From positions 558,001 through 622,000 of the forward strand of contig NIVC01000230.1 in NCBI GenBank assembly GCA_002269645.1: 64,000 nucleotides of DNA, written 5' to 3'. The DNA is from Macrostomum lignano (lineage: Eukaryota). A model generated the notes under the pieces. That model was not told where the DNA came from. It searched no databases and worked only from the letters and a program-made list of their open reading frames with translations. The position numbers and the translations under genes were made by a program. Positions 12,043 to 64,000 of this stretch are shown here, in pieces; within the stretch, counting starts at the first letter, position 1, and the number at the start of each line of letters is the position of its first letter.

Positions 12043-16981
<4,939 letters not shown>

Positions 16982-28659: not shown

Positions 28660-29880
28660 TCTCACAACATAACACCCTGTGCTGTCACATAACACCCTGT
28701 GCTGTCTCATAACACCCTGTGCTCTCACATAACACCCTGTGCTCTCACATAACACCCTGTGCTCTAGCATAACATCCTGTGCTCTCGCATAACACCCTGT
28801 GCTCTCACATAACACCCTGTGCTGTCACATACACACCGTGCTTACCCATAACACACTGTGCTCTCTCATAACACCCCGTGCTCACCGATAATACCCTGTG
28901 CTCTCACATAACACCCCGTGCTCTCACATAACACCCCGTGCTTACCCATAACATACTGTGCTCTCTCATAACACCCTGTGCTCTCGCATAACACCCCGTG
29001 CTTACCCATTACACACTGCTCTCGATCATAACACCCTGTGCTCTCTCATAACACCCTGTGCTCTCACATAACACCCTGTGCTCTCGCATAACACCCTGTG
29101 CTCTCACATAACACCCTGTACTCTCGCATAACACCCTGTGCTCTCACATAACACCCTGTGCTCTCGCATAACACCCCGTGCTCTCGCATAACACCCCGTG
29201 CTCTCGCATAACACCCTGTGCTCTCACATAACACCCCGTGCTCTCACATAACACCCCGTGCTTACCCATAACATACTGTGCTCTCACATAACACCCTGTG
29301 CTCTCGCATAACACCCCGTGCTCTCGCATAACACCCCGTGCTCTCGCATAACACCCTGTGCTCTCACATAACACCCCGTGCTTACCCATAACATACTGTG
29401 CTCTCACATAACACCCTGTGCTCTCGCATAACACCCCGTGCTCTCGCATAACACCCCGTGCTCTCGCATAACACCCTGTGCTCTCACATAACACCCCGTG
29501 CTCTCGCATAACACCCCGTGCTCTCGCATAACACCCGTGCTCTCGCATAACACCCTGTGCTCTCACATAACACCCCGTGCTCTTGCATAACACCCTGTGC
29601 TCTCACATAACACCCCGTGCTCTCGCACAACACCATGTGCTCTCACATAACACCCCGTGCTCAAACATGACATCACACCCTTGTGCTCATCCATAACAGC
29701 ATGTGATCATCGATAACACCCTGTGATCACCCATAACACTGTGTTGAAACATAACACCCAGGTGCTCACCCATTACACCCTTGTGTTCACAATCGCACAT
29801 AACACCGTGATAAACCATTTCCCCCAGTGATCATCCATAGCACCGTGCTCACACATAACACCCTTGTGCCCACACATACC
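28660..29880. repeat. 20-bp minisatellite (cataacaccctgtgctctca) decaying at its 3' end
   Basis: Direct reading; it explains ORFs 28591-29593. Confidence 0.95.
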
Positions 29881-30711: not shown

Positions 30712-31602
30712 CGGGTGGATAGATCAGGGGTGGGTCAGTGTGGATAGATCAGGGGTGGGTCAGTGTGGATAGATCAGGGATGGGTCAGTGAGGATAGATC
30801 AAGGGTGGGTCAGTGAGGATAGATCAAGGATGGGTTAGTGAGGATAGATCAGGGGTGGGTCAGTGTGGATAGATCAGGGGTGGGTCAGTGTGGATAGATC
30901 AGGGGTGGGTCAGTGTGGATAGATCAGGGGTGGGTCAGTGTGGATAGATCAGGGGTGGGTCAGTGTGGATAGATCAGGGATGGGTCAGTGTGGATAGATC
31001 AGGGGTGGGTCAGTGTGGATAGATCAGGGGTGGGTCAGTGTGGATAGATCAGGGATGGGTCAGTGTGGATAGATCAGGGATGGGTCAGTGTGGATAGATC
31101 AGGGATGGGTCAGTGTGGATAGATCAGGGATGGGTCAGTGTGGATAGATCAGGGGTGGGTCAGTGTGGATAGATCAGGGGTGGGTCAGTGTGGATAGATC
31201 AGGGGTGGGTCAGTGTGGATAGATCAGGGATGGGTCAGTGTGGATAGATCAGGGATGGGTCAGTGTGGATAGATCAGGGGTGGGTCAGTGTGGATAGATT
31301 AGGGGTGGGTCAGTGTGGATAGATCAGGGATGGGTTAGTGAGGATAGATCAAGGGTAGGTCAGTGAGGATAGATCAGGGGTGGGTCAGTGAGGATAGATC
31401 AGGGGTGGGTTAGTGTGGATAGATCAGGGATGGGTCAGTGTGGATAGATCAGGGGTGGGTCAGTGTGGATAGATCAGGGGTGGGTCAGTGTGGATAGATC
31501 AGGGGTGGGTCAGTGTGGATAGATCAGGTGTGGGTCAGTGAGGATAGATCAGGGGTGGGTCAGTGAGGATAGATCAGGGGTGGGTCAGTGTGGATAGACC
31601 AG
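30712..31602. repeat. 25-bp G-rich minisatellite (gatagatcaggggtgggtcagtgtg)
   Basis: About 35 tandem copies. Confidence 0.96.
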
Positions 31603-43505: not shown

Positions 43506-45428
43506 ATGGCCTCGCCATACTCAGTCGAGGTGCTCAGAGCTGGCTACAGCTCAGACGAGCGCAGCGCCTGCACCATCACCCTGGTTAGCGGAGCCAACCA
43601 GCACATCCTCATCGACACTGGCGGTCCCTGGGAGGCCGACCTGCTAACCAACTTGCTGACTGCTCGCGGCCTCTCAGCCTCCAGCATCAGCATGGTGATC
43701 TGCACGCACGGTCACGTGGATCACATCGGCAATCTGGCCATGTTCTCAACCGGCTGTCCTAACAAACTCATGATTGTCGGCTGCGATATTGCTCAATCTC
43801 CTGATCGATTTCTGGCCCACGATTTTCGGTCCGGCATCGCCTACGAGTTGGACGAGTTTGTCCGGATTGTACACACGCCGGGACACTCGTCCGACGATGT
43901 CACCGTGCTGGTTAGGACCAGTTCGGGGCCGCTGTTTGAGGCCATGAAGGCTGAGGGAGAGTCCGAGATAACGGTAGGAAATTATAGGTGTTTATTTTTT
44001 CAATCTGTTTTGATCGCCTAGTCATGTAGTTCATATCAACACAGGCTTTTCTTTACATATTTCTGCTATCTGTCATGGCTACTTCTAATAAGTTGCCTTG
44101 TTTTCTGAACAATTCCGTTCTGACTCCTTATAGCCACCTGAGTGATTCCCCTCTATAGCCACCTGAGCGATTCCCCTCTGACTCCTTATAGCCACCTGAG
44201 CGATTCCCCTCTGATTCCTTATAGCCACCTGTGCGATTCCCCTCTGACTCCTTATAGCCACCTCTGAAATTTCCCTCTGACTTCTTATAGCCACCTGAGC
44301 AATTCTCCTCTGACTCCTTATAGCCACCTCTGAAATTTCCCTCTGACTTCTTATAGCCACCTGAGCAATTCCCCTCTGACTCATTATAGCCACCTGAGCA
44401 ATTCCCCTCTGACTCCTTATAGCCACCTGAGCGATTCCCCTCTGATTCCTTATAGCCACCTGTGCGATTCCCCTCTGACTCCTTATAGCCACCTCTGAAA
44501 TTTCCCTCTGACTTCTTATAGCCACCTGAGCAATTCTCCTCTGACTCCTTATAGCCACCTCTGAAATTTCCCTCTGACTTCTTATAGCCACCTGAGCAAT
44601 TCCCCTCTGACTCATTATAGCCACCTGAGCGATTCCCCTCTGACTCATTATAGCCACCTGAGCGATTCCCCTCTGACTCCTTATAGCCACCTGAGCGATT
44701 CCCCTCTGACTCCTTATAGCCACCTGAGCGATTCCCCTCTGACTCCTTATAACCACCTGAGCAATTCCCCTCTGACTCCTTATAGCCACTGTCCAATTCC
44801 CCTCTGACTCATTATAGCCACCTGAGCGATTCCCCTCTGACTCATTATATCCACTGTGCAATTCCCCTCTGATTCCTTACAGCCACCTGAGTAATTCCCC
44901 TCTGACTCCTCATAGCCACCTGAGCGATTCCCCTCTGACTCCTTATAGCCACCTGAGCAATTCCCCTCTGACTCCTTACAGCCACCTGAGCAATTCCCCT
45001 CTGACTCCTTATAGCCACCTGAGCGATTCCCCTCTGACTCCTTATAGCCACCTGAGCGATTCCCCTCTGACTCCTTATAGCCACCTGAGCGATTCCCCTC
45101 TGACTCCTTATAGCCACCTGAGCGATTCCCCTCTGACTCCTTATAGCCACCTCTGAAATTTCCCTCTGACTCCTTATAGCCACCTGAGCAATTCCCCTTC
45201 GCAACACCATTCCCGCAGGTGGCCGTGGCGGGCGACCTGTTCGAATCCGAGGCCGACTTCAATGCCGACGGCGACGCCCAGTGGATGAGCCGGTCAGCCA
45301 ACTCGGAGGTGCAGACCGACCAGCGCAAGCGAATTCTGCACAAGTCGCAGGCGGTGGTGCCCGGCCATGGGCCCGCGTTCCGCGTCAAGCCGGAATTCCA
45401 ACGCTCGGTTAGTGTGGAGGAAATGTGA
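43506..45428 (+). CDS. MBLAC1: Metallo-beta-lactamase domain-containing protein 1-like; exons 43506-43973 and 45219-45428 (225 aa)
   Basis: ILIDTG, THGHVDHIGN (HxHxDH), HTPGH, VAGDLFE and VVPGHGPAF motifs; GT-AG phase-0 intron. Confidence 0.9.
44105..45200. repeat. 33-bp intronic minisatellite (tagccacctgagcgattcccctctgactcctta)
   Basis: Direct reading; it explains ORFs 44085-45454. Confidence 0.96.
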
Positions 45429-47336: not shown

Positions 47337-50300
47337 TCACTATTGAAGGATGGCACGCCACGCATACCATGGGGCTTCAATCTCTTTCCCACTACCTCAG
47401 AGCACTGTGTCAATTTACGGCTACAGTTTATTTTAAAACTATTGTAAAAACAGTTCAAAATCATGCAGCAAATTTTTCCTGATAACACAAACTTGTCGAA
47501 CTTTACTGTATAATTAAGTCAACTCTCGCGAGACTTAAAATGGCTAACAGCATTGACGAGGCCGCAATTGCAATTATGGAAGGTTCCCTGTTTTCACGAT
47601 CATCGTGTCGTCAGCGGGCGGCGCTCAACCTGGCAGGCGACACCCCGGAGGAGCGTAAGAACAGTCTGCGCACGTTCTTCGCCGCCATCGTCAATGCACC
47701 GCCGCCGCCCACGCTGCCAGCTGATCTGCACCTGCCGCCTGAAACACCAGTGCCAACGGTGGAGCAGTTCAACACCAGTCCAGTCACCCCTGCCGATGTT
47801 GTGACCCTCGCCTTTAAGACCCCGGGTGGCAGGGCGCTGGGTCCAGACGAAGTGCCAATCGAGGCGCTGCGCATCACCTGCGTGGCCACTGAGGTCACCC
47901 GTGTGATCAACAGCATGCTTGCCGGAGGTCCAGCACCTACCGAATGGACCATGACACACTTCGTCGGCATACCAAAGAAGCCTGGCACCACCAAGCTGGA
48001 GGAACATCGAGGCATCTGCCTAATGTCCATCGCCGCGAAGCTGTTCAACCGGCTCCTGCTTACCCGGTTGCAGCCCGTGCTGGATCCCTACCTGCGGACC
48101 GAGCAGAACGGGTTCCGGCCAAGACGCGGCACTGTTACGCAGATCCTGGCCCTTCGGCGAGTCATCGAGGAGGCGCGCACGCGCCAGTCAAGCCTGATCG
48201 TGGTCTTCGTCGACTTCAGGAAGGCTTTTCGACTCGGTTGCTAGAAGCGCGCTTCCACTGGTGCTCAGAGCGTACAACGTGCCGCAGCAACTGGTCAGTG
48301 CTACGATGGCGCTGTACCAGAACACCAGAGCTGCGGTGGTGACGCCAGACGGCCTCTCGGACACCTTCGACACGTCATCCGGAGTGCTCCAGGGGGACAC
48401 GCTGGCGCCCTTCCTGTTTGTACTGGTTCTGGACTGGGTGCTGCGGACTGCCCTACCAACAGCCGACGATGGCTTCCTCCTGCAACACCGTGTGGGCCGC
48501 CGCCAGCCAGAGCGTCGCCTCAGCATCCTGGGCTACGCCGATGATCTCGCCCTGCTGTCCTCAACCGTCGAGGGCGCCCAACGTCAGCTGGACCGTCTGG
48601 TTGGCGTTGCTGCGAGCGTCGGCCTGGTGATCAACACGCAAAAGACCGTCGTGCTCACCATGCCCACCAACATCCAAGCCGACATCTACTGCCGGGGCGC
48701 TGATGGGCAGGCAACGCTGCTGCCGCGCGTTCAGCAGTTCGTGTACTTCGGCGGCCTGGTACCTGACGCCTTCGACGACCTGAGGCGTCGCCGTGGACTC
48801 GCTTGGGCGGCCTTCAACTCCATGAGGACCGTCCTGCACTCTGCGGCCCTGCCAGACCGCCAGCGCTCGGCGTTGTTCCAGGCGGTGATCGAGACCGTCC
48901 TGCTCTACAACGCTGAAACATGGACGCTGACGGAGACGCTCGAGCGACAGGTCGACGCGGCGCACGCCGGCCTGCTGCGCGCTGCCTTCAAGATCGGCGG
49001 CGGCGAGCATGTCACCAACGCGGCGCTGTACGCCCGAGCTCGCCTGGCCCGCCCCAGCGATCTGCTCCGCCGCCGGCGGCTCCAGCTGGCAGGCCACCTC
49101 ATCCGCGCTGAGGCGTACTGCCCCGAGCCGGCGCAGGAGACACTGCTGCCTGCGCTCCCGGCGCCCTTCCGGCGGGGCAGGCGCGCACTCGGCGGTATCC
49201 GGACTGCCTGCTGGCCGATGCTGGCGCCCCCGACCAGGCCGGTGGACCGGCCTTTCTCCGCTCCCGTGCTCTGAGGCGCGACCTGTGACGCCCAACACCG
49301 ACCCTGGCGCGTAATTTGTTGTTGTTGTTGTTGTCTGTTTTCACCAACGATGGCAGCGACAGTGAATATGTGAGTGTCGATGGAGAGTTGCTGGACGAGG
49401 AAGATGGTGAGAGTAATCCAGAACCATGAGTAATGCGGAGCATAGAGTCGAGTTTGTCAACGAGAAAGAATGGACAGCTGCTCAATATGGTGAAGATTCG
49501 CGTCTCAGCGATCTGCCCGAATTCCTCGCTGTGCCTGGCCTGAACCCAGACATTCAAGCACAAGCTTCTGAAGGTAAAATGGGCCCAGGTGCAATTCTAT
49601 CTGCAGCACTTTCTCACCGCTGATCTGGTGTCTGCCATTCGCATCTGGACCAACGCCCGAGCTGACATGGAGCTTCAACAGCTGAAGATCAGGATGGATC
49701 TCTTCCCAATTTGCTATCAACTTGGAGACCGTGTACCGACAATGAGGTGAAGAAGTCTCTAGCAATCGTTCTGTACATGGGTCTTGTGAAGAAGCCCGAA
49801 ATGCACATGTTACTGGTCCACGGGTGACTTCTACGGTGGCGAATGGCTTGTAAGAACTTGCAAGAACTTGTAAGAACTCACAGAAAGAACATTGCCTTGG
49901 AAGGGATCGGTTTGTGCAGATATTATCATGCCTTCGATTTTACGACTGCACCACCGTCAACCACCAGGACTCCTTGAAAAAGATTAGACCTTTTCTTAAT
50001 ATTGCCCGCAATATTTGCCAAGCAAATTACAGCCCAAGTCAAGAGGTGCCTGTCGATGAAGAACTGGTCAAGTACAAGGGCAGGCTCATGTTGGTTCATG
50101 CCCAACAAGCGTGCCAGATTCGGCATCAAGGTCTACTGCTTGACGGAAGCTTCGACAGGTTTTCTGTGGAACTTTCATGTACGACTTACATGCTGCTAAG
50201 CAGGATAACGACAAGTTTGGAGATGGATTAAACTGCGGGAGTTTGTCGATGAGCGAGACGATCGTCGAATTGAGTAAAAATTTGCTGGACCTGGGGACAA

Positions 50301-52033
50301 GGTCTTCTGTGACAGCTGGTTCACATCGCTCCGTCTGGCGCAGTTTCTGCTGGAACGCAGTACTTTACTGACTGGGACGGTGAGGCCCAATCGAGGTGCG
50401 CCGAATGAGCTGAAATTGCTGCCCCTGCAACCCATCAGTCACTCCCAGATGCGCCGCGGCGATGTTCTCGGAGTCAAGCTGATAGACAGGAAGGCAAGCG
50501 GTCGCAAAACTGTGTACCTGTTGGGCACGCACGGTGTTGCTGAAAGCACGGAAGTGAGGCGAATGATCCGAGGCGGAGCGGAGGAGTCAGTTTTAAAGCC
50601 GAATTCGGTGCTGCAGTACAATAAGAACATGGGAGGCTTTGATCGCCTTGATTCAGCACTGCAGCCTTACAGTGCGGGGAGAAGAACATACAGATGGCAC
50701 CAGAAGCTCGGGTTCCACATTTTGCTGCAGTTGGTCCGCAATGCCTGGATCTGCAACTGCCAAGGAGGAAGCGATATCAAATTCGTTGAACTTTTGGAAG
50801 CTGCGATCCGCACTCTCATGGAGCAGACAGGCCGGGGCAAACGTCTGAATACACCGAAGAGCAGGGCCGTCTCATAGCACGCGCCATCGAAGCTGCTGCC
50901 GACAGATGCCAATGCGAGGCCGACAAAGCAATGCAGAGTCTGCTACAGCAATGGTGTGGCCAAGAGAACGGTGTTCGTATGCGCTGGTTGCGCAGGAGAG
51001 CCCGGGCTGTGTGCTGTCCCATGCTTTCAGAATTGGCACACTGCAGCAGCACAGTAGTTGCACTGCTGGTACGGTGTAAAACTTAATTACGTTCAGAATA
51101 TGAAATTCAAAACGCTCCTCCTTAATGCCTCATCAATGCATTAAATATTGTTTACCTAATTGTTTTTTGTTTTGTTGTTGACCTTTTTTAAAGTTTTTGC
51201 TATCTATCCTGTACTTGCAGTCAAATATAGGTAAAAAATTACAAAAAAATAACATGGAATATTTTCTATTTAGGGAAACTATATTTTGTTGTCTGTTTGT
51301 TAACTTTAGAGAAAAAGTGATTCTTTCACTTTGCAAACATCTTTGTCCGTGACAATTTTAGACGAATAAGGTGATTTTTAAAAGTGAAGAAGGAATTGGT
51401 GTGCTTTTTTATTGTTTTCCATGAACTATTTTTGCTCCTTTCTTATTGGGCGCCCCGAAGGGGGGCCGCACTAGATTGCTAGTTTATGCTAAACCATCTA
51501 GGCCATAGACACGTATTCTCAGTGTATGGTTAAATGAGACCCATGGCACGCCTGGCGTCCCATCAGTGTTGGGGGGGGGGGGGGGTTAACCCCCATATGC
51601 TCCTGAGGCCGCAAACCCCGAGAAAGGCAAGGAAATTTTTACTGCCACATTAAATTTTGGCGACACTGGGCAGACAAAATACTGAAAATAGTAGACGCTC
51701 TACTTTTTTCGCAGCTTTAATTGCGAGGTATACATATCCTGGCGTTATTTTTAGTATCTGTCAGTAATAGTCATATTTAATGTACGAGTAATTAGCACAC
51801 CAAATAGAATCAATTATAAATGTGGGAATTTTGCTAGCATATGGATGAACAAATAAGAAGTGTTCCTCAAAATCAGGAGTAATTTCCCCTTGATCAATTT
51901 CTATTGGTTGCTAAGTTTGTTGATGCTGACTTTGTAATCCCCCTATAATGAATATTGGGTAATATTCGAAAATTGATTGAATGCAGGGAAATCTAGCTAA
52001 TGCTCATAAATAAAATTGCTTCCAAAGGGTTAA
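47337..52033 (+). mobile_element. Decayed piggyBac DNA transposon (multi-frameshifted transposase at about 47540-47597 plus 49335-51057)
   Basis: Transposase motifs across frames: VDEELVKYKGR, FGIKVYCL, FCDSWFTS, TGTVRPNRG, YNKNMGGFDRLD and a C-terminal Cys-rich CRVC..CAGC..LC..CFQNWH. Inverted repeats 47349-47372 and 51541-51564 match 20/24. A caaaggg|TTAA end lies at 52030-52033. The outer boundaries are uncertain. Confidence 0.88.
47598..49334 (+). mobile_element. 5'-truncated RTE-clade non-LTR retrotransposon (reverse transcriptase, one frameshift) nested in piggyBac
   Basis: RT motifs GRALGPDEVP, RGICLMS, EQNGFR, FVDFRKAF(DS), GVLQGDTLAPFLF and YADD. An extra T at 48226-48229 splits the ORF. 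A (TTG)n 3' tail is present, and a perfect TSD ctgttttcac lies at 47588-47597 and 49335-49344. Confidence 0.92.
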
Positions 52034-52140: not shown

Positions 52141-53111
52141 TCAGGACGAATCGTCTCGTGACCTGAGTCTGGCCAGCTCCATCTTAAGACTCTTCATCTC
52201 TTCGTCTTTTTCTCGCTCCTTGGTTATGATTAGCTCGCGTTCTGCCGCCAGTTGGATGTTTTCCAGCCTGAGCTGGTCAATCTCCTGGTCTCTCTTGTGC
52301 ACCATGCTGTAAACTTGGAGCACGTGTTGCAGTGAGTCGATGAGCTCCTCGTTGAGCGAGATCGGTCCCAGGCGCGCCTGCCGCTCCAGGGCTTCGAGTG
52401 CGCGGTGGCAGGTCTGGAGAGCGGCAGCAGCCTCACTGAGCACCCCCGCTTTCTTTGTCAGCTCGCTGGAGCTCAGTTTGGTTACGTAAGCCGTCCCGAA
52501 TGCTGTAACTCCCAAGGCAGTAGCTCCACCAGCTGCAGCAGCAATGAAACTGCAGGAGAGGCCAAGGATGGCAGCAACTCCAGACAATGCCGTGGCTAGG
52601 CCGTAGCCCCACCGTTTCCAATTCGTAGCTTTTTGTCGGACTCGCTTGACTCCTTCTCGACCTCGGCGATTGTGCTAGAGAAAAACTCCCGTAGCTTCTC
52701 CATGCTAACTAGGAACTTCTTCATCTCCTCCAGGTGCTGCTTCGAGATGGCAATAGAGTTGTCCAGCTGAGTCTGAATTTCACTGACGTCGGCTTCCGTG
52801 ATCTTGCCAGATTTGATCATCCGCGTCAGGCACTTCTCAACAAACTGATGCTGTTCCTTCAGCGGAACTCCAGTTCGGCTTAGCTCGTCGATTTTCGTCT
52901 TGCATTCTTTGAGCTTCTCCTTGCCTAGTTGGAAACTAATCGAATCGAGCTCCGTTATTTGCTCGCATCGGACGTGAAGGTCCTGTAGGCCTTCTTTTAT
53001 CGTCTCCATCTGCCTGACAGCTTCGGCGACCTTGTGAGTGGCGTCCAGCACTATGCTCCAGCATGCCAGATTTTTTGCCATCTCAGCCGATGCCTCACTT
53101 TGATTGGACAT
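52141..53111 (-). CDS. Family member 3 (about 323 aa once a 1-bp deletion is repaired); frameshifted gene or assembly indel
   Basis: ORFs 52596-53111 and 52141-52587 join if one A is added to the run at 52630-52634. That gives DKKATNWKRWGYGLATALSGVAAILG...AAAGGATALGVTAFGTAY and then a coiled coil. Confidence 0.72.
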
Positions 53112-54554: not shown

Positions 54555-56351
54555 ATGTCAGACAATCCAAAAAAGTTGAAAAATCTCAAGAAGTGTTTGC
54601 GCGCTGTGCATAACGAAAACGCGAGATCTCCAGAGCAACTGCGACTGTAAGTGAAACCAAGAAGTTTATTGATGAATTATATCAGTCGCTGAAGCTACTT
54701 GCAAAAGAAGAATCTGGTACACCAAGAGATGGCAACTATGAGGAACTACTGCTTCATCTACAGAACGGTGTGAAGGAAATTAAGATTATTTCTTCCAGTA
54801 TGAAAGCTATGAAGCAACATCACGTGCCAATTGAATCCGACCTCAAACTCACCGTATTTTCTAAAAGAGATTCACGAAAATCCGTCCAAACAAAGAACAC
54901 TACTGCGGCAGTTATTAGCAACAAACTGCAGGAGTCGAAAATTCTTGTCGAAGGTATCGCGGACTCAATGAGGTTTTTCCAGCAGCAGTTAGAAAGAGCA
55001 GACAAAGTGCTTGAGCAGCTCATCAAAGCGCTCCAAGATCAGGAAGACGTCCTAGAAAATCGTGCGAGTTGGCGTCGATGGTTGGGATATGGGGGCGCAG
55101 CAGCACTCGCAGCCTTTACCATTGGCTACATCTACTTTGCTTGGCCTTTGAGTTTTTCAACTTTTTGGTCGAGCAGCTCCAATCCAACAGTCGCTACCTC
55201 TTCGTCTGCGCCTGTAGAAAAATTAATAAATTGCGCTGCCACATCCGTTGATACTGCTGTAGCTTCTCAGCCAGTTGAGACTGCTCTGGCAGTTTCTGCT
55301 GCCGATAATGCTGCTGTAGCTTTAGCTTCTCAGCCAGTTGAGACTGCTCTGGCAGTTTCTGCTGCCGATAATGCTGCTGTAGCTTTAGCTTCTCAGCCAG
55401 TTGAGACTGCTCTGGCAGTTTCTGCTGCCGATAATGCTGCTGTAGCTTTAGCTTCTCAGCCAGTTGAGACTGCTCTGGCAGTTTCTGCTGCCGATAATGC
55501 TGCTGTAGCTTTAGCTTCTCAGCCAGTTGAGACTGCTCTGGCAGTTTCTGCTGCCGATAATGCTGCTGTAGCTTTAGCTTCTCAGCCAGTTGAGACTGCT
55601 CTGTTTCTGGCCGAACTGCTTCTGTTGTGACGACTACAATAATGCCAGCTGCAGCCGGAATCGCAGCCGTCGTGGGTCTTTCGTGGTATACATACAAAGA
55701 AGTTGGCCAGCTAGTGAAAGCGGCGCAGGAAATTCAGAAAGTTAAAGCAAAACTTGTCTCCTCCAAGAAAAATTAAGAGCTCAGCTTGAAAATTTTCAGG
55801 AGATGTCATGTATGAATATTGAAAGTGTAGCCAAAAGTCTTGAAGTAGACCTTGGACTTTGTGATGAGCAAAAGCTTCAGGACCAGCTCCAGAAACAAGT
55901 GGAGGAACTCCAAGCGGCCCAGAATGATACTACTCAGAAGCAGGTGGTCCAGAATGAGGCAGCTGAGAAGCTAACAGTACAGCTCCAGGCCATCCAGAAA
56001 CAAGTGGAAGAACTCAAAGCTGTCCAGAATGAAACTACTCAGAAGCTGGTGGCCCAGAATGAGGGAGCTCAGAAGTTAGCAGTACAGCTCCAGGCCATCC
56101 AGAAACAAGTGGAAGAGCTCCAGGCGTCCCAGAATGAAGCTACGCAGCAACAAGCGGCCGAGCTTCAGGTGATTAAAATCAATCTGGAGGCCTATCTGGA
56201 GGCGGCCGTGGACCGCACGGACGCAGGTTCCGAGCTCAGTGAATCATCAAGCAGGAATGGTATTCCGCTAGAGAAGAAACGAAATATTATGCCGCCCCCA
56301 GGTATTAACGAAAGCAACGATCATAATGGCTACGAGGAAATTGCTGAGTAA
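54555..56351 (+). pseudogene. Family member 4, broken by several 1-bp indels; contains 63-bp and 105-bp coding repeats
   Basis: SWRRWLGYGGAAALAAFTIGYIYF resembles the hydrophobic entry of member 3. Single-base repairs near 55603 and 55760 chain ORF 54770-55630, a second hydrophobic helix (IMPAAAGIAAVVGLSWYTY) and ORF 55803-56351. It could be an intact gene with assembly errors. Confidence 0.55.
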
Positions 56352-58731
56352 GTTTTTGATCAGCCTCTGCGATTTTGGAGAGCCGAGCTGCCTTTAAATG
56401 ACATATGACTTACTTAACGTTTGCATGTTTTCTAAGCTCTACTCATCGACTCTCTCGATCAGTTGTAAACCGATTGATTGCATTACTCGGCATTGTAGCT
56501 ACTAACAACATTTTTCCTGATCGAAACAATTTTATTTATTTATTTATTTAAACAGTGTTAGGCGGAGGTTAAGTAACTTCCGGTTCCAAGGATAGTAACT
56601 TCCGGTACTTCAGTTACCGGTCCTTTCTAATTTTAAAGAACCACCAATTAAAAAGTGCTCAAACATTCCTTTTTGAAAAACCATAAAACATGTGTTGATC
56701 CAGAATTAAGCATGCTGTTATTCCTCAAATAAAGATGTTTTACATAATATTTTTTATTATTATCGCATCCAAAATTTGAGTGAATAGAGAAAACCTTTTA
56801 CAAAACAAGAATTAGCAGTATATCAGGGCGTACGCTGCACTTGCGATTCGCAGAAAAAAAATTTGGATGCCGATCTTCAAATATTTATTATGACTCAAAT
56901 TCAGAAGTATCGCATTCTGGTACTTATACAAAAATGGATGTATGGAGATTATTTTTTCCAAAATGTATGTCACAATGAGTAGAATACTTCAGACGAATTT
57001 AGTTTGTGTGGGTAATTCTCGTCGCCCTACTAGAATTGTGCTGTAGTTTTACAGCAGCTATACTTTTACAGCAGTGTAAGTATACTTTTGTACTGCTGAT
57101 TCATTTAGAATCAATGATAATCTTCTGCCAGCCTTGGAAATGCCAGTTAACAATTAAGAAAAAATATATACCAGGTCAACAAATAGCTGCAATTAGATAG
57201 ATGGACCAATGCAAAAGACTTTAAATAACTTGATTAGTGCCTTTGCGTTGCAATTAGAAAATTATAATTAGGATCAATGCATCCATGTCCCGAATTGCTT
57301 TATATTTCTTCTGTGTTTATTGGGCTTCCCACTAAGTCGGAGGGCTACTACGAGTATGATCGAGAGTTATGTTGGTAGTATGGCTACGTAGCTAGAAAAC
57401 ACCCTACTGCGTCGTATGCTTCATAAATGCCGGTGAAAAATAGAAACTTTCTTAATAAAAAACTGGTGAAAAAGGAACGACCCAGAGCTATAAGACATCA
57501 ATGTGGTTAAGTATTTATAGAGCGGTAACTACTTTCTGCAGCGCTAAAATACGGCTCGTACTTTATTTATTTCCATCTTCTATTTATTTATTTTATTTTA
57601 TGTTCAAAATAATGCTTAATAACGAAATAAAAAACACTCGTTTAACACTTTTATTCTCAAAAGAATAATTTTCGCTGTTTTTTGCAATTGCCAATGCTTC
57701 ACTAGTTATTCAACAAAATGTTCTTTTCTGTTTGTAAATCATTTAATTGTACAAATCATTTGTATTGGGTTGTTCTGTAGAAAAAATAAATTGAAACCAA
57801 TCATTGATACAAATCAAAATTAATGGAGAAAAATTGCTCACACGTTTACTGGTCATTTTATTCCGAAAAAAGCTGTTTCGAATACATTCTTTGCTAAAAA
57901 ATTACATTTGCAGAATCATACTTGGCCAAAGCATCTAAACTGTGAATTTTTACTGTGAATTTGTGCCTGCTAGTGGGTTTATTTGCTTCTTCCATTTGAA
58001 AAGCCAGAATTTTTCTCTTACTGACTTCGGGGATCGAACTTGAACAGTTCAGTTGTCATGGTGACCTGGCGATTCATTGCCACATACTCCAGCTTTGCTT
58101 TCGGTGCGCGTACACTTATTCAGCGTTTATTTTCTTAGAAGCTAAAAAACAGAATGCCCCATTTAACGTGGCTTGTAAAACGGTTCAGTAAATGTACAGT
58201 AACTCCAGCATGCATGCACTAACACCAAATGTGCATGCACATTCACCTATTCCACTTACCTTAATAGACGAAAACAATCGTTTAAGCAAAGTGCTTTCTA
58301 TCTTTCTGAGGCTTATAGCATAACGTGGGTAGACTTGGGTAGTGGATAGATGCTTCTAAAAGAGACGTCCATAAAACGGCAGTAAATACCAGCCGACAGT
58401 CTATCACGAGTTCGAGATTGACTTTAGTATCCAAATTTTTAGTAAGAGATTTCACGGAAGTTGACCTGACCAAGGAATAGATGAGCTTACTTTAATATAT
58501 TTGCTTCGCGCGGCCACTTTGCTAGCTACTCTCATTGCGCGATCCATCATGATTTACATGAAATTTAGGTTTTTGTTTTTGGAAAATATCGATCATCTTG
58601 ATAGTGAAGCATAATAAAATTTTGCTAAAATTATTTACTAATTACGATATTGCTCGGAAGTAGTAATACGCTTGTATCTAATTCTAATAAATAAGAGTCG
58701 CTAATCAAAAATTTCCAAAATTTTCAATGTT

Positions 58732-61700
58732 TCAAGACATCACTTTTTGTACAGCGCGCTGTCCAGCCACAGTCCCAGCGCCTCGACGTCGCGGTCCTCC
58801 GCGCTCATGTCGAACCAGTTCGTCGCCGGCCCGGACTCTCCTCCACCGTCGAGTCGCTGATTTGCCAATGCCCGGTAGCGAGCTCTTGACCGGCTGTCCA
58901 CCTGCGAGTGAATGGGGATCGATACTGTATGTCTCACTCACACAGCAGTGAGGCAGAGCTGTCTCACTCTTACAGAGCTACACAAAACTCAGACCTGCTC
59001 ACTCAGCTGATTGCGAGAGTCTCACCTGTCCAACCTGAACTACCAGCAGGCGGCGTCTGAACGAGTTCGCAGCGAGGAAGGCTTGGAACTCGCACTGCAG
59101 CTCGGCCTCGTCTCTGAACCAACTGAGCAGGCCGTTGCTGAGCAGCAGCACGAACTGGCGAGTTCGCTTCATCATGAAGCTGTTGATGCGGCCGGCTGGC
59201 GAGGCGCCCTCGAAGTTTTCAGGCCAGCGATCAGCCAGGACCGCGTCGTTAGTACCGAGCCGAACGCCAGGGAGGCGACGAACGATGACCTCGACAACGG
59301 TGTTAGAGTTCGAATCTGGGTCGGCTCGGGACTCGGAGTCAGAGGCGGACTCCAGAGCGGACAGGATGAAGACCTCCGGCATTTTGTCCGAGTGGAACGG
59401 CGGCCAGTCCCGAATCGTGCCCAGAATGATGCGGCTTCCTAATGATGCGGCTTTAGGTAAGTAATTATATCAAAAGACACTGACATTGATATTTTTCTGT
59501 TCCAACTTAATTCGCCAAATGCGAGCATTACTGAAAACAAATTGATAAGCTTAAACTGTATTCTAAGCAAAACTGTAGTTGCGCTTGCTATTCAGGAAGA
59601 ATTGATTAATTCTTACGCATAAAATCCATCGTCTGATCAACGTCGACAACCAGCGGCTGCTCATCAGAAGTTAGATCTACCAGCTCCTTAGGTTCAGCCG
59701 CTGTTGAACTCTCAGTGCCAACGGTTGCCAGCGCCGCAGCTGTGGTAGTCTCTGGAACCACTGACTGATCAAACATGAGAACGGCGGCCGGATCTCGGTT
59801 TCGAATGCGCTCGATGAGTCGGTACTCCCAGTCCACCGACTTGTACACGATGTCGCTCCCTGCGAGGATTCTCTGCAGAGTGTGGAACGCCTCCACGTCC
59901 TCAGGTCCGAGCTGTCTCTGGCGCTGAAGCGACACTCTGCGCGAGCTCAGGCGCAGAAACACAATGTCCTTGAACGGATTCCGACCTACGCTGTCGAGCT
60001 CTCGAATCACCTGGCACAGAGCCAGGTACTGGGTGTCGAGGAACCTCTCGGTCAGAGCTACCACCACCTTGCCGCTGAACTTGGCTCCCTCAGCCGGACA
60101 GTCAAAGTAGGTGAGCGGACAGGAGCACAGGTCCGAGTAGAGGAAGCTCTCCGGAACGCACAGCTCGAGCTCGTCTCCGCCCGAGGCGCTGCGCACGCAG
60201 TTCAGCACGTCGACCAGACAGTCCTGGTCTCTGTCCGACGCCCACAGCATCGCGTCGTACGGCAGCGAGTCCCGAGATGCCTGATGCTGCAGTCGCCGAC
60301 TGCTCTGGTACTTGAGGAGGATGAGGACTCGAACAACGGCCAGCAGTCGGTGTCGACGGCGGACAGCGAGCATCGCGAGACCGAGCAGCACGAGACCAAA
60401 TGCTGAGGTAAGAACGATCACGACGATCTGCTTTCGCTGCTGTGCTGCTGAGTCCGCTATGAGCTCGCACACTTTGACAAGTCTGCCTTCATCACTCACT
60501 AATTGATAGTCTGTTGAGTTTTCTATCTTCTTACAGACGACGTTCCACTTGTGATCGTGACTGTTGACCTTACAGGCGTCAATTATGTCTTGGTCGACAC
60601 TGCAGGTCATACGTTGAAAGTCGGACACTACTTGTGTAGTTTTAGAGACCTGCAGAAGCGTTTGATGCAACTGCAGCCATTCTTTAGTGCAGGTGCAATG
60701 CCACGGGTTGTCACTTAGAGTGATGTCCATTAGACTCGGCAAGCAGTTCTCATCGAAAATCTCAACATCAAGTGTTGTCATGTCGTTGTTGTTTAGTGAT
60801 ATGTTTTGGGTGTTGTTCGCGAAAGTACATATCGACTCTTTTTTGAAACTCTTGATTCGATTGTGATCCAATTCAATCCGGGTTAGGCGGTGGTCGAAAT
60901 TAAAAGCCCCGTTCTCAATGTAAACAATGCCACTGTTGCTCAATTTCAGAAACTCCAGCTGTGCGGAAAAACTCTGAGGCTTCCACTTGAAGGTTCCAGA
61001 CGATATGTGGCGAAGACTGTCGACACCGTGGATGTCTGACATGTCAATTTTCTTTACTGGATAGTCGATAACCAACTGTGACAGACTGAGTGATTTGTTT
61101 TGACATTGTAAGTCGAAGAATGTCCAGTCTTCATTGTGATAACACGAGCATCCTGCCATGCAGTACACCCAGCACTTGGTAGGGTCCGTGCAGTTCTTAC
61201 TGGGCAGCTTGTGTTTCTTTTTGCCTTCAAAGTTGCAGAGAAATTGTACAGACTGCTGCTTGGCCTCACGGAGAGAGAGATTTACTTTGCCTCTGTCAGG
61301 ATCAAAAAACGTGCAGTTTGAGTCCATCTCCTCATCCGGAATTCGGGGATAATGGTATTCGCTATGTTCGGCCCACGGGGAATTCTCCTCCTCTTCGAAT
61401 GTCTTCATGTAGACACTGCCGCAGTCGCAGACTAAATTATTTTGCTGGTTCTTTGCGTACAGCACCACTCTGGAGCCCAGTGTCGTTCTCTTCGTCATAG
61501 TCATGCTGTCGTAGTAGATATGAAGCAATTGGTTGTGGCTGAGGTCAATGAAGTCCAGCATCTTAAGATTATTGAATGCACCTGTTTCAATCGCAGTAAT
61601 GCAATTATTGGCCAGCTTAACTCTGTGCAGTTGAGAAGATCTTGGCAAGGAGTCATTCTCGACGTTTCCTAATTGATTGTGCTGAATACTGATCTCCTCC

Positions 61701-64000
61701 AGTCGCTCTAGGCTTGACAGTAAGAAGTACATTAATTTATTATAGTCTAAGTTCAAAACAACAAGGCTGCCTTTTAAGCGGGACTTTGCGAACGCTTCCG
61801 GGTTTATGGTGGTAATCTGGTTGCCTTGGAGATGGAGCTCCGCCAATTGGACCTGCGAATGCCAAACATGTAGGAAGGCACCTTTTTAAATACTACGAGT
61901 ACAGCGTGTGCAAGTAAAGCTAGCAGGTTAATTTTTAATAAACGAATATGAAGGATCCCACACCATTTTAGTTCTACTTTGTCTTTGATAACCTTTCGTT
62001 TTGATTCTCGCTCTCCCGCCCCGCCTCTTACTTAGGGGCTGAGTAAGGGCTGAGCAAGGCAGTAACGTGGCCGACTCTCGAGCTTAAGTTCCGAGCGCGG
62101 CCACATTAATGTCTACTAAGCCTGCTCCGTGGGCCTCAGTGTAAAGTTTGTCAGCTCCACCCTTTCCCCTCGCGCCCTCCTCTCAACTCTCCCCCTCGCC
62201 CCATGCCGGGGTTTTTTTAACCCCGTATTTTCAGGCTTTGCCTTGGCACTGCGTGCAATGGTGCAATTGCTCTGATTTTCATTCTTTAGCTGTTTCAACA
62301 ACCATGGAAATTGCACGCGCACTACTAACAGCCAGACAGCTCAGAGCGGAGCTGGCCAAGCGCGGTCTACCAAACACAGGCTGCAAACAACAGCTCTACT
62401 AACGGCTATGCCACCACTTGTAGTCTGAAAGTCCCACAGCCGACTCTGATGGCTCCGGCGCGACTCTTGATGCAGGAATCATCGCCGACTTGTCAACAGG
62501 TGGGCACAAGGAACGAGGTGGGCACGGGGCGCTGCTGGCGAGGTTCTGCAGATGGAGGTCGAAGAGCTGGAAATCAAGGCGCTGACGCGGCGCCGTGCTC
62601 AACTGCAGCGGCAGTTCAACGATAACCAGACTGCTGCCTCCCTACTTAAAGGTGAGCCCACTGATTTTTCTTCTGGTGTGCATGAGGCCTATTTATCTTG
62701 CGCTGGTATATAGAGCGCGGTCAGTCGGCCAGAAAGAGCAGCCGGGCCTACCTGATCCGAGACTTTGTCAAGCCCAATGCAAATCAGTCAAGCGAGAGCC
62801 TGACCGCTTGTATGAGAACGGCAACTTGTTATTCAAGAAGCAGCTGCGAAACCCAAGCAAGATTTCCACCGGCCAATGAATCTCCGGTAATGCTCAAATC
62901 CTACAGCACCAGATTGATGACGGCTCGCTCATCTACACGAATGTCGACGGGTCTCTACCAGCGAGCTGAGAGGCTACCCAGTAGATCTGCGAACTTCTTG
63001 ACGCCAACTACAGCCCATATATTGCGGTGGGAGTTTGATAAAGTTTACAGGAAGCTACTGGCCGAGCCGGACTGACTGCCGGCTGTCAGTGGTTTAGCTG
63101 CAGGTGCCCGCATGTCTGCAAGCTGCCCGGCTGCGGTTAAGCCACACCCCACCCACCTGCATCGTCAAAGTAGCAATGTGGCGGAAGGATAAAAAACTAA
63201 AAGCAATTGCCTGTACCTTCCTGTCGCTGCTGTGTGGATTTTCGGGTTAACTTTTGTTTAACGCACGAACTATCAAAATAACGGAGCTCGAAAGCTCCAG
63301 GGTTAACGCCGTTTGACTCTCGTTCCACGATCGCTGGTTCGATTCCGTGCCCGACCACATTCATTTAAGGATCATGGCCCTTCAAATGGCCAAGGGTTGT
63401 CATGTGATTCACACCCATGATCGCCAATCTCCAAGGCACAGAGAGTGCACATGCCTGACGATTATAAAGTCAGGACCACTGTGCATGTACATTCTGTCTC
63501 AATAGTCATCAATAGTCAGCGGAATGGGCAGAACCGTTAGTTGTGTTACGATATCGCCGAAGGTGTTGCGCCAGGTTGCTTAAACCCTAATAAAAAATTA
63601 ACTAAGTAACTAAATTAGTTACTCACGTTATACCAGGGCTGAATTTCGCCGATCAATTCGATTCTATTGTAGGACAAGTCCAAAACCTTCAGAGTCTGCG
63701 CAGAGGCCCTGAACCAGTAGCAGTGTCTGTTCTTGCCCGTTCCGTTTTGTACCGGTGGACGCCAGCAGATCCAGTCGCGGTACAAGCCGGAGATGCGGTT
63801 GTGGCTCAGGTTGACAGTCTGGAGGTTCCCAAGCAGGCTAAGCGAATAGGGTATTTCATTAAGTTTATTGAAGCTGAGGTCCAAGTAACTCAGTCCGACG
63901 CCCCAAGGAACCTGTTTGCTCAAGTTCTGCTTATTTTCGCTCTTGTTAAACTCCTGATGACCAAACACCAACGAAAAGTCAATGTTATCGTTGTCCATCA
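58732..64000 (-). CDS. Toll-like receptor-like protein (LRRs, LRRCT/LRRNT clusters, TM, TIR-like, second TIR-like); exons from beyond 64000 to 63627, 61852-59617, 59438 (or 59450) to about 59001, and about 58930-58732; 5' end outside window
   Basis: LxxLxLxxN repeats, NNLVCDC and NPWHCTC caps, TM IVVIVLTSAFGLVLLGLAMLAV, and TIR box-1-like YDAMLWAS with KVVVALTERFL. The junctions YN|VQLAE (phase 0) and DFMR (phase 1) are GT-AG. The last exon frame is uncertain. Confidence 0.85.
62305..63075 (+). pseudogene. Decayed retroelement gag-like remnant with N-terminal SAP domain inside the TLR intron
   Basis: LTARQLRAELAKRGLPNTGCKQQLY*RL is SAP-like; downstream frames are interrupted by stops. No LTRs were identified. 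Confidence 0.4.

What the first reader, a model, noticed from the sequence alone, without database searches (positions are those of the whole stretch)
58732..61852. Toll-like receptor apparently carrying two tandem, degenerate TIR-like domains
Seen: the 746-aa ORF has LRRs, a TM helix and a TIR-like domain, and a GT donor at 59616 precedes its stop. In phase it splices to an exon (59438 or 59450) encoding EVFILSA...RQFVLLLSNGLLSWF...CEFQAFL...RRLLVVQV, which has the beta-alpha pattern of a second TIR. The first TIR lacks the usual BB-loop RDxxPG and the WC..E helix motif. Known: canonical TLRs have a single TIR. Inference: a receptor with a built-in adaptor or decoy TIR, or a sensor/enzyme TIR pair.
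Basis: partly seen in the sequence, partly recalled or inferred. Interest (0 to 1): 0.75.

Follow-up and report, generated by a model that had tools for sequence, protein, structure and literature searches.

The report
Flatworm Toll-like receptor, possible second TIR
This is the 3' end of a flatworm (Macrostomum-type) Toll-like receptor gene with a very degenerate signalling (TIR) domain. Two more coding exons follow it and probably splice on to add a second, weakly TIR-like domain, but neither the splice nor the fold could be proved here.

Summary

**The receptor.** The minus-strand gene is a Toll-family receptor. It aligns colinearly with an arthropod Tollo-like protein through LRR, LRRCT, LRRNT, LRR, LRRCT, TM and TIR (BLASTP E 5e-20). 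Its closest relative is Macrostomum lignano A0A1I8HBV3.

**First TIR.** It is real but degenerate. There is no Pfam hit, no RDxxPG and no WCxxE.

**The splice.** A GTAAG donor lies 8 nt before the stop. It is in phase with AG acceptors at 59451 and 59439.

**The downstream exons.** Exons 59438/59450-59026 and 58901-58740 are clearly coding:
- GC3 is 0.77, against 0.31 GC in the spacer.
- They are separated by a canonical in-phase intron.
- Two M. lignano copies exist. One of them again lies just downstream of a receptor paralogue.

**Evidence against a free-standing gene.** Conservation with one M. lignano copy starts at the acceptor, not at the only ATG. That ATG codes Val in that copy.

**Second domain as a TIR.** The similarity is weak. 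A home-made TIR HMM gives p of about 0.0003-0.001 against shuffles. hhalign gives 0.002-0.056. Pfam and PDB give nothing, and the AlphaFold model is low-confidence and not TIR-specific.

**Context.** Twin-TIR Tolls are already known in bivalves. No transcript data could be reached. An SL-trans-spliced downstream gene remains a serious rival.

The parts
63627..64000 (-). Upstream LRR-coding exon of the receptor gene. It runs off the window end and finishes at donor AAC|GTGAGT (GT at 63626-63625).
   Evidence: Pfam LRR_8/LRR_1 hits. 64% identity to P0001 residues 240-312. Donor read.
61853..63626 (-). Intron 1 (GTGAGT...CAG, phase 0).
   Evidence: The junction restores colinearity with P0001: IQPW(Y/H)(N/Q)|V(Q/A)L.
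59617..61852 (-). Large exon encoding LRRs, LRRCT, an LRRNT-type cysteine cluster, LRRs, LRRCT, TM, TIR1 and an acidic/Ala-Thr-rich tail.
   Evidence: Colinear BLASTP with Tollo-like P0008 (E 5e-20). 56% identity to M. lignano P0001 over 99% of the ORF.
60362..60427 (-). Transmembrane segment IVVIVLTSAFGLVLLGLAMLAV, followed by RRRHR.
   Evidence: It aligns with the TM of P0008.
59792..60262 (-). TIR1, a divergent Toll-type TIR domain. Box 1 (YDAMLWASDRD) is kept. The BB-loop RDxxPG and WCxxE are lost.
   Evidence: MAFFT register with six Toll TIRs. hhalign E 0.0023. Own HMM: 5/3000 shuffles reach the score. The AF2 model (pLDDT 54) hits TLR1/2/6/10 TIRs in Foldseek, best E 5e-4 (biased by the MSA). 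No Pfam hit.
59606..59616 (-). Consensus donor GTAAG (GT 59616-59615, phase 1), immediately followed by the in-frame stop TAA 59608-59606.
   Evidence: It matches the M. lignano cis-donor motif GT[G/A]AG (PMC8629364).
59439..59616 (-). Putative intron 2, or an intergenic spacer. GC is 0.31. There is no AATAAA/ATTAAA. The alternative acceptors are AG 59452-59451 and AG 59440-59439. A TTTCAG site at 59536-59531 could serve as an SL acceptor.
59026..59438 (-). Region 2 exon A (starts at 59450 with the upstream acceptor). It encodes (R)SRIILGTIRDWPPFHSDKMPEVFILSA...RRRLLVVQVGQ. The only ATG is at 59382.
   Evidence: GC3 0.77. 88-90% identical copy in M. lignano A0A1I8HAL1. The TIR-profile match covers beta-C to beta-D.
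58902..59025 (-). Intron 3 (CAG|GTGAGA ... TCGCAG|G, phase 0).
   Evidence: The spliced frame stays open.
58740..58901 (-). Region 2 exon B, VDSRSRARYRALANQRL...NWFDMSAEDRDVEALGLWLDSALYKK*, with stop TGA at 58742-58740.
   Evidence: 73% identity to P0086 1035-1073. GC3 0.77.
58630..58639 (-). Near-consensus poly(A) signals AGTAAA/AATAAT about 100 nt after the region 2 stop. An ATTAAA lies at 58496.

Best explanation
The locus is the 3' half of a multiple-cysteine-cluster (Drosophila-type) Toll-like receptor gene of a Macrostomum-type flatworm.

**The receptor.** Its cytoplasmic TIR domain is so diverged that standard HMMs miss it.

**The splice.** The receptor reading frame most likely does not end at the TAA at 59606. 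A phase-1 intron runs from the GTAAG donor at 59616 to an AG acceptor at 59439 or 59451. It joins the frame to two further exons (59438/59450-59026 and 58901-58740).

**The added domain.** These exons add a lineage-restricted domain of about 190 residues with alternating strands and helices. It resembles the beta-C/alpha-C/beta-D core of TIR domains (RQFVLLLSNGLLSWFRDE..., RRRLLVVQVGQV).

**Proposed product (inferred).** The product would be a twin-TIR-type receptor. A degenerate membrane-proximal TIR would serve as the dimerisation scaffold. An acidic, probably disordered linker of about 55 residues would connect it to a distal TIR-like module acting as a built-in adaptor or effector surface.

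**Shown:** receptor architecture and homology, coding nature of the downstream exons, splice-site geometry and phase, and recurrence of the layout in M. lignano.

**Inferred:** that the splice is used, that domain 2 has a TIR fold, and any signalling role.
For: **Receptor**
- The alignment with Tollo-like P0008 is colinear from the LRRs through the TIR.
- The closest relative is M. lignano A0A1I8HBV3, which its source names 'TIR domain-containing protein'.
- For TIR1: MAFFT register, hhalign E 0.0023, 5/3000 shuffles reaching the score, and Foldseek hits to TLR TIRs.

**Splice**
- GTAAG lies 8 nt before the stop and is the only GT[AG]AG in the last 880 nt.
- Both acceptors are in phase.
- The region 2 frame opens only 19 nt upstream of the first acceptor.
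- The spacer has GC 0.31 and no canonical poly(A) signal. Such signals follow the region 2 stop.
- Homology with the M. lignano copy begins at about 59433, right after the 59438 acceptor. It includes 17 codons upstream of the only ATG, which is Val in that copy.
- P0086 contains a stretch that is an antisense translation of the P0001 locus. A DNA sequence consistent with both proteins exists over 62 codons. This shows that region 2 also lies just downstream of that receptor paralogue.
- The Ser-Lys codons of the P0001 tail are constrained to AG[CT] AA[AG]. This is compatible with a phase-1 GTAAG donor at the equivalent place.

**Domain 2 as a TIR**
- HMM scores of 4.4-6.5 bits are reached by 1-3 of 3000 shuffles.
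- hhalign gives E 0.0023 with the six-sequence profile.
- MAFFT gives a full-length register with W-x-x-x-E kept.
- A five-fold strand-helix pattern is read from the sequence.
Against: - No transcript evidence could be obtained.
- The existing M. lignano model of the paralogue (P0001) stops without region 2. In the admittedly chimeric model P0086, a region 2 copy is joined to unrelated upstream sequence that is absent from this window.
- The acceptors are AAG and TAG, not the usual CAG (for the motif).
- ATG 59382 has a good AAAATG context.
- M. lignano trans-splices 30% of its genes and has operons with spacers of about 100 bp.
- Domain 2 has no hit in Pfam, PADLOC, NCBIfam or PDB sequences.
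- hhalign with a nine-sequence profile gives only P 0.056, and 8/150 shuffles reach that score.
- AF2 on exon A, run with a TIR-containing MSA, still gave pLDDT 54. Its Foldseek hits were generic alpha/beta folds (best E 0.048; a TIR at 0.067).
- Regions 1 and 2 show no similarity to each other.
Confidence: 0.45

Rival explanations
1. There are two genes. The receptor mRNA ends soon after the TAA at 59606. Region 2 is a separate small downstream gene of about 172 aa starting at ATG 59382. It could be the second gene of an operon resolved by SL trans-splicing, for example at TTTCAG|T 59531/59530 or at the 59451/59439 AGs. Alternatively it could be a gene with its own promoter. It would encode a TIR-only or orphan alpha/beta protein that may still work with the receptor.
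For: - M. lignano has 30% SL-trans-spliced genes and 15% of genes in operons, with a modal spacing of about 100 bp (PMC8629364).
- The spacer here is 156-224 nt.
- A [T/C]TNCAG-type site exists at 59536-59531.
- ATG 59382 sits in an AAAATG context.
- Existing gene models do not fuse the two parts.
- Region 2 has a copy with a different upstream context.
Against: - There is no canonical poly(A) signal in the spacer.
- A consensus donor sits right at the end of the receptor ORF, in the right phase.
- The ATG is not conserved (Val in the M. lignano copy), and homology starts at the acceptor.
- The AUG at the 3' end of the SL would be out of frame at both acceptors. At 59438 it would open an overlapping ORF of about 90 codons (read from the sequence, with the SL sequence).
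Confidence: 0.33
2. The fusion is real, but domain 2 is not a TIR. The receptor carries a lineage-specific C-terminal alpha/beta domain of another or a new fold, and the TIR-like motifs are coincidental.
For: - No library HMM or PDB sequence hit.
- Foldseek on the model gives RecA/KaiC/Elp-type alpha/beta proteins ahead of TIRs, and none is significant.
- hhalign P is only 0.056 with the broader profile.
- phmmer against 1.84 billion representatives found only the Macrostomum copy.
Against: - TIR-HMM scores beat 2997-2999 of 3000 shuffles. They rise when SARM1 is added to the profile.
- The matched segment is the most conserved TIR core.
- Twin-TIR receptors are a known architecture.
Confidence: 0.15
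3. Region 2 is a decaying or unexpressed duplicate exon pair that was carried along with a segmental duplication or gene conversion. It is not part of any functional mRNA.
For: - The few substitutions that can be inferred against the M. lignano copies are not clearly biased towards synonymous changes (small and noisy sample).
- The surrounding genome is rich in repeats and transposons.
Against: - The frame stays open over 137 + 53 codons with intact GT-AG splice sites.
- GC3 is 0.77, equal to that of the receptor's TIR exon.
- At least three intact copies exist: this window plus two in M. lignano.
Confidence: 0.07

Closest known systems
Protostome-type (P-type, multiple cysteine cluster) Toll receptors such as Drosophila Toll and Tollo/Toll-8
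   Same: The order of parts is the same: LRR, LRRCT (NxxxCDC), LRRNT-type cluster (C..GCSCYH..W), LRR, LRRCT, single TM, TIR. The alignment with a Tollo-like protein is colinear.
   Different: - TIR1 is only 16-22% identical to Toll TIRs and is below Pfam detection.
- Its BB loop lacks RDxxPG and carries an insertion of about 4 residues, and WCxxE is replaced.
- The host phylum is reported to lack TLRs (PMC8609888).
Twin-TIR Tolls of bivalves (Crassostrea gigas twin-TIR loci; Hyriopsis cumingii Toll with tandem TIRs)
   Same: A P-type ectodomain followed by two cytoplasmic TIR-type domains in tandem (PMC5845394, PMC8181103), if the splice and the fold proposed here are real.
   Different: - In the bivalve proteins both TIRs are recognisable by standard tools. 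Here neither is.
- The second domain sits on separate exons after a linker of about 55 residues.
- No sequence relationship to the bivalve proteins was tested.
TIR-only proteins working with LRR-only receptors (Hydra HyTRR/HyLRR), and TIR adaptors such as MyD88 and SARM1
   Same: If region 2 is a separate gene, it would be a small TIR-like protein encoded next to its probable receptor partner. The segment RQFVLLLSNGLL resembles SARM1's RNFVLVLSPGAL. Adding SARM1 to the profile raises the score.
   Different: - There is no death, SAM or ARM domain.
- Pairwise BLASTP with the SARM1 TIR is not significant.
- phmmer with SARM1 alone gives p of about 0.011.
Macrostomum lignano A0A1I8HBV3 (P0001) and the region 2 copies inside the chimeric model A0A1I8HAL1 (P0086)
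   Same: - The TM and TIR1 are about 97% identical to P0001.
- Region 2 is 88-90% identical to the P0086 copy.
- The same receptor-then-region-2 layout occurs at the P0001 locus.
   Different: - The ectodomain is only about 40% identical to P0001.
- Neither deposited model joins the receptor to region 2.

Membership tests
Toll / Toll-like receptor family | Extracellular leucine-rich repeats | tested here: met
   Pfam LRR_8 1.2e-20 and LRR_4 2.6e-8 on the 746-aa ORF. LRR hits also on the upstream exon.
Toll / Toll-like receptor family | Multiple cysteine clusters (LRRCT-LRRNT in mid-ectodomain plus a membrane-proximal LRRCT), which define the P-type/mcc class | tested here: met
   BLASTP aligns NNLVCDC, CMAGCSCYHNEDWT and NPWHCTC with the corresponding clusters of Tollo-like P0008. 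The Pfam LRRCT and LRRNT models themselves did not score.
Toll / Toll-like receptor family | Single transmembrane segment between ectodomain and TIR | tested here: met
   A 22-residue hydrophobic stretch flanked by basic residues aligns with the TM of P0008. No dedicated TM predictor was run.
Toll / Toll-like receptor family | Cytoplasmic TIR domain recognised by curated models (the criterion used in TLR surveys) | tested here: not met
   No PF01582 or PF13676 hit even at E<=10. No PDB phmmer hit.
Toll / Toll-like receptor family | Cytoplasmic domain homologous to TIR by alignment or structure | tested here: met
   - The BLASTP alignment with P0008 runs through boxes 1 and 2 and strands beta-C and beta-D.
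- MAFFT register with 7 invariant columns.
- hhalign E 0.0023.
- 5/3000 shuffles reach the HMM score.
- Foldseek top hits are TLR TIRs, but the model is low-confidence and biased by its MSA.
Twin-TIR Toll receptors | A second TIR domain C-terminal to the first | tested here: inconclusive
   Weak profile similarity. No library hits. The AF2 model has pLDDT 54 and its Foldseek hits are not TIR-specific.
Twin-TIR Toll receptors | Both TIRs in one polypeptide (one mRNA) | not testable with these tools
   Splice geometry and comparative hints favour this.
NAD+-cleaving TIR enzymes (SARM1, plant and bacterial TIRs) | Catalytic glutamate in the alpha-C region (W-x-x-x-E context) and measurable NADase activity | tested here: inconclusive
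   - Region 2 has SWFRDE aligned to SEWCRFE in MAFFT, but the alignment is weak.
- TIR1 lacks the Glu.
- The same Glu is present in non-enzymatic TLR TIRs.
- Activity cannot be tested here.
SL-trans-spliced operon (downstream gene) | A [T/C]TNCAG acceptor at the 5' end of the downstream gene, a short spacer, and a 3'-end signal for the upstream gene | tested here: inconclusive
   - The spacer of 156-224 nt fits.
- The acceptors where homology begins are AAG and TAG, not CAG.
- A TTTCAG exists at 59536-59531.
- There is no AATAAA or ATTAAA in the spacer.

The most novel reading that the evidence does not exclude
A phylum reported to have lost Toll-like receptors in fact keeps Drosophila-type Toll receptors. 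Their membrane-proximal TIR has decayed to a scaffold. They are fused by splicing to a fast-evolving, Macrostomum-specific second TIR-like module that retains W-x-x-x-E. That module would act as a built-in adaptor or effector. It is also a portable 3' exon pair, found behind at least two receptor paralogues and possibly behind an unrelated N-terminus.
Probability: 0.27. Interest if true: 0.65.

Novelty: new variant of a known kind. Interest (0 to 1): 0.45.

Why it matters
**Surveys that rely on Pfam TIR hits.** Such surveys report no TLRs in Platyhelminthes, including M. lignano (PMC8609888). This locus and its M. lignano relative show a full Toll architecture whose TIR falls below those thresholds. 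The reported loss may therefore be partly a detection artefact.

**If the downstream exons are spliced on and fold as a TIR.** Twin-TIR receptors would then have arisen outside molluscs. The locus would offer a natural case of a degenerate scaffold TIR paired with a second module. That is useful for asking how TIR signalling works in animals with reduced adaptor sets.

**If the splice or the fold is not real.** The finding reduces to a divergent Toll-like receptor next to an orphan gene.

Tried and rejected
- **Word-indexed protein searches.**
  - Region 2 alone found nothing.
  - The spliced C-terminus found nothing, although close relatives exist, so that index is unreliable for these sequences.
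  - All three searches of this kind are now used.
- **Exhaustive phmmer with region 2 exon A.** It found only M. lignano A0A1I8HAL1. A second hit (P0087) is a low-complexity repeat protein and was disregarded.
- **Looking up contigs for P0001, P0086, the 127-aa ORF and the 746-aa ORF.** Nothing is on record.
- **Spliced region 2 sequences.** I did not try them by any other route.
- **Upstream exon of P0086 (...KFKAELVQ).** I searched the window for it and found no match. I also compared it with the receptor tail and found no similarity.
- **Library scans.** Pfam on the P0086 region 2 context, and PADLOC and NCBIfam on both domains, returned nothing.
- **Tandem duplication of TIR1.** Rejected. 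The two domains show no similarity to each other.
- **SARM1 TIR against region 2.** BLASTP is not significant.
- **Synonymous versus non-synonymous changes.** I tried to infer these from the antisense stretch of P0086. The sample was too small and the edges too noisy to show selection on region 2. It did indicate near-identity at the DNA level in TIR1.
- **Donor in the P0001 tail.** I tried to recover it. The codons are only constrained to AG[CT] AA[AG], which is compatible with GTAAG but does not prove it.

Full report
**What is there**

The minus strand between 64000 and 58740 carries one receptor gene and two further coding exons.

- The receptor starts outside the window. An LRR-coding exon ends at 63627 with AAC|GTGAGT.
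- A 1.77-kb intron ends at CAG|G, giving an exon start at 61852.
- Pfam finds LRRs only (LRR_8 1.2e-20).
- The best relative is Macrostomum lignano A0A1I8HBV3 (P0001, 1068 aa). It is 56% identical over 99% of the ORF, and its source names it 'TIR domain-containing protein'. The window therefore comes from a Macrostomum-type flatworm. The species itself was not determined.

**The receptor is a Toll**

BLASTP against a Tollo-like protein (P0008) gives one colinear alignment of 724 columns, E 5e-20. It runs through:
- the LRRs;
- the first LRRCT (NNLVCDC against NPIICDC);
- the mid-ectodomain cysteine cluster (CMAGCSCYHNEDWT against CPEGCSCYHDNSWT);
- more LRRs and the second LRRCT (NPWHCTC);
- the transmembrane segment (IVVIVLTSAFGLVLLGLAMLAV, 60427-60362);
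- the TIR domain.

This is the protostome-type, multiple-cysteine-cluster architecture. A published survey reports zero TLRs in M. lignano and concludes that flatworms lost them (PMC8609888). That survey required a detectable TIR domain, which this protein does not give.

**The first TIR (60262-59792)**

Evidence against a standard TIR:
- Pfam TIR and TIR_2 do not hit, even at E<=10.
- phmmer against PDB sequences finds nothing.

Evidence that it is nevertheless a TIR:
- MAFFT places it in register with six Toll TIRs over their whole length. Seven columns are invariant, including box 1 (YDAMLWASDRD) and the L-C of strand beta-B.
- hhalign gives E 0.0023.
- A TIR HMM I built scores it at 6.2 bits, a score reached by 5 of 3000 shuffles.
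- An AlphaFold model made with that small alignment has pLDDT 54. Its best Foldseek hits are the TLR1, TLR2, TLR6 and TLR10 TIRs (best E 5e-4). This last result is biased by the TIR sequences in the alignment.

- RDxxPG is replaced by SDLCSC, with an insertion of about 4 residues.
- SEWCxxE is replaced by TQYLALC.

**The junction**

- The ORF ends ATG C|GT AAG AAT TAA. The GTAAG at 59616 matches the M. lignano cis-donor motif GT[G/A]AG (PMC8629364).
- It is the only such motif in the last 880 nt of the exon. There are six in 2247 nt, so one falling in the last 15 nt has about a 4% chance.
- It leaves one base of a codon. AG acceptors at 59452-59451 and 59440-59439 both restore the downstream frame.
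- That frame is closed by a TGA only 19 nt upstream of the first acceptor.
- The two acceptors arise from a 10-nt direct repeat, CCGCATCATT.
- The 166/178-nt spacer has GC 0.31, against 0.60-0.65 in the flanking coding parts.
- The spacer contains no AATAAA or ATTAAA. AGTAAA/AATAAT and ATTAAA follow the final stop at 58740.
- Against the splice: the acceptors are AAG and TAG rather than CAG.

**The downstream exons are coding**

- Exon A (59438/59450-59026) and exon B (58901-58740) are joined by a canonical phase-0 intron (CAG|GTGAGA ... TCGCAG|G).
- Both have GC3 0.77, like the TIR1 part of the receptor at 0.73.
- An exhaustive phmmer search of 1.84 billion representative proteins found one real relative. 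It is residues 901-1035 of M. lignano A0A1I8HAL1 (P0086), at 90% identity.

**What P0086 tells us**

P0086 is a 2297-aa chimeric gene model, but it is informative in three ways.

1. Its sense copy of region 2 matches the window from about 59433 onwards. That is from just after the 59438 acceptor, 17 codons upstream of the only ATG (59382). The ATG codon is Val in that copy. This argues that the exon is an internal or terminal exon rather than the start of a free-standing ORF.
2. Its C-terminal third is an antisense translation of another locus in which a receptor cytoplasmic region and region 2 are adjacent, as in the window. A DNA sequence consistent with both this stretch and the tail of P0001 exists at a single offset over 62 codons. 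So region 2 also lies just downstream of the P0001 receptor.
3. The same constraint fixes the Ser-Lys of the P0001 tail (..EQPVTSKY..) to AG[CT] AA[AG]. That is compatible with a phase-1 GTAAG donor at the equivalent position, though not proof of one.

Against the fusion, the sense copy in P0086 is preceded by unrelated sequence (..KFKAELVQ). That sequence has no counterpart in the window and no similarity to the receptor tail.

**Is domain 2 a TIR?**

Negative results:
- Pfam, PADLOC, NCBIfam and PDB sequence searches find nothing, either with the single sequence or with a two-sequence profile.
- AlphaFold could only be given exon A (137 residues, truncated after beta-D), because spliced sequences are not accepted. 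Even with Toll TIRs in the alignment it gave pLDDT 54. Foldseek returned only non-significant, generic alpha/beta hits, the best at E 0.048, with a bacterial TIR at 0.067.
- Domain 2 is not a duplicate of TIR1.

Positive results:
- hhalign against six Toll TIRs gives E 0.0023, over the stretch from the end of alpha-B to beta-D.
- My nine-sequence TIR HMM gives 4.4 bits, reached by 3/3000 shuffles.
- Adding the SARM1 TIR gives 6.5 bits, reached by 1/3000 shuffles. The M. lignano copy gives 5/3000. I recalled the SARM1 sequence from memory and confirmed it exactly against PDB entries.
- With this profile domain 2 scores above the bona fide TIR1.
- hhalign with the two-sequence query and the nine-sequence profile is weaker: P 0.056, with 8/150 shuffles reaching it.
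- MAFFT gives a plausible full-length register. It places VFILSA at beta-A and RQFVLLLSNGLLSW at beta-C. SWFRDE falls on SEWCRFE, RRRLLVVQVGQV on beta-D, and WFD...LWLDSAL on box 3.

I put the chance that it has a TIR fold at roughly 0.6.

**Alternatives**

- **Two genes.** M. lignano trans-splices about 30% of its genes. Its operons have a modal spacing of about 100 bp, so a two-gene reading is a serious rival. A TTTCAG site at 59536-59531 could take the spliced leader. Against this, the SL ends in AUG and would be out of frame at both acceptors where homology begins. There is also no canonical 3'-end signal for the receptor in the spacer, and the ATG is not conserved.
- **My estimates.**

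| Reading | Probability |
|---|---|
| Receptor spliced to region 2 | about 0.55-0.6 |
| Separate gene | about 0.33 |
| Unexpressed relic | about 0.07 |

The best-explanation confidence of 0.45 covers the fusion together with a TIR-like second domain. The strict twin-TIR reading (fusion and a true TIR fold) is about 0.35.

**Comparison with what is known**

- Toll receptors with two tandem TIRs are already described in bivalves. Examples are the oyster twin-TIR loci and a Hyriopsis Toll, summarised as 'Twin-TIR resembling P-type' (PMC5845394, PMC8181103).
- If real, this is therefore a new variant of a known architecture and not a new kind. It occurs in a phylum said to lack TLRs, and both TIRs are degenerate.
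- The adaptor, decoy or enzyme ideas are untested. The W-x-x-x-E in domain 2 also occurs in non-enzymatic TLR TIRs.

**A further observation**

- Conservation against P0001 is mosaic. It is about 40% in the ectodomain. From EGRLVKVCELIADSA through TIR1 it is about 97%. GC3 jumps from 0.57 to 0.73 at the same boundary.
- The antisense stretch in P0086 implies only about 1-2% DNA difference in TIR1.
- This points to recent gene conversion or exchange of the 3' half between paralogues, while the ectodomains diversify.

Noticed in passing
window 61852-59792 compared with P0001: Conservation between the receptor and its M. lignano paralogue is mosaic. The ectodomain is about 40% identical. The stretch from just before the TM through TIR1 is about 97% identical. 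GC3 rises from 0.57 to 0.73 at the same point. DNA divergence in TIR1 is inferred at only about 1-2%. This suggests recent gene conversion of the 3' half while the ectodomains diversify.
   Followed up: partly
window 59450-59425: A 10-nt direct repeat, CCGCATCATT, occurs at 59450-59441 and 59434-59425. It creates the two alternative AG acceptors 12 nt apart. Both are in the same phase, so they could give products differing by four residues.
   Followed up: no
window 2160-47224, e.g. 12084-12903, 28667-29781, 30715-31602, 32963-34041, 44154-45198: The window has a very high density of minisatellite arrays (periods of 12-163 bp, up to 56 copies). These account for the strong GC-skew spikes in the composition profile.
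   Followed up: partly
window 47540-49274 (+) and 49914-50877 (+): There are fragmented reverse-transcriptase ORFs (Pfam RVT_1, split over two frames). Next to them are piggyBac-type transposase fragments (DDE_Tnp_1_7). Both are probably dead mobile elements.
   Followed up: partly
window 54770-55630 (+), repeat at 55256-55603: An ORF contains 5.5 near-perfect copies of a 63-bp (21-aa) coding repeat, ASQPVETALAVSAADNAAVAL. Neighbouring ORFs (52141-53111 on the minus strand, 55803-56351 on the plus strand) look coiled-coil and Gln-rich. None has a significant Pfam family.
   Followed up: no
P0086 (M. lignano A0A1I8HAL1), residues about 760-1073 and 1915-2296: This deposited gene model is a chimera. 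It strings together a C2H2 zinc-finger gene, a sense copy of region 2 with an unrelated N-terminal extension, and antisense translations of the P0001 receptor locus. The sense copy hints that the region 2 exon pair may also be attached to another gene.
   Followed up: partly
literature compared with window 64000-59606: A published survey lists M. lignano as having zero TLRs (PMC8609888). This gene and A0A1I8HBV3 have the complete Toll architecture, with a TIR below Pfam thresholds.
   Followed up: partly
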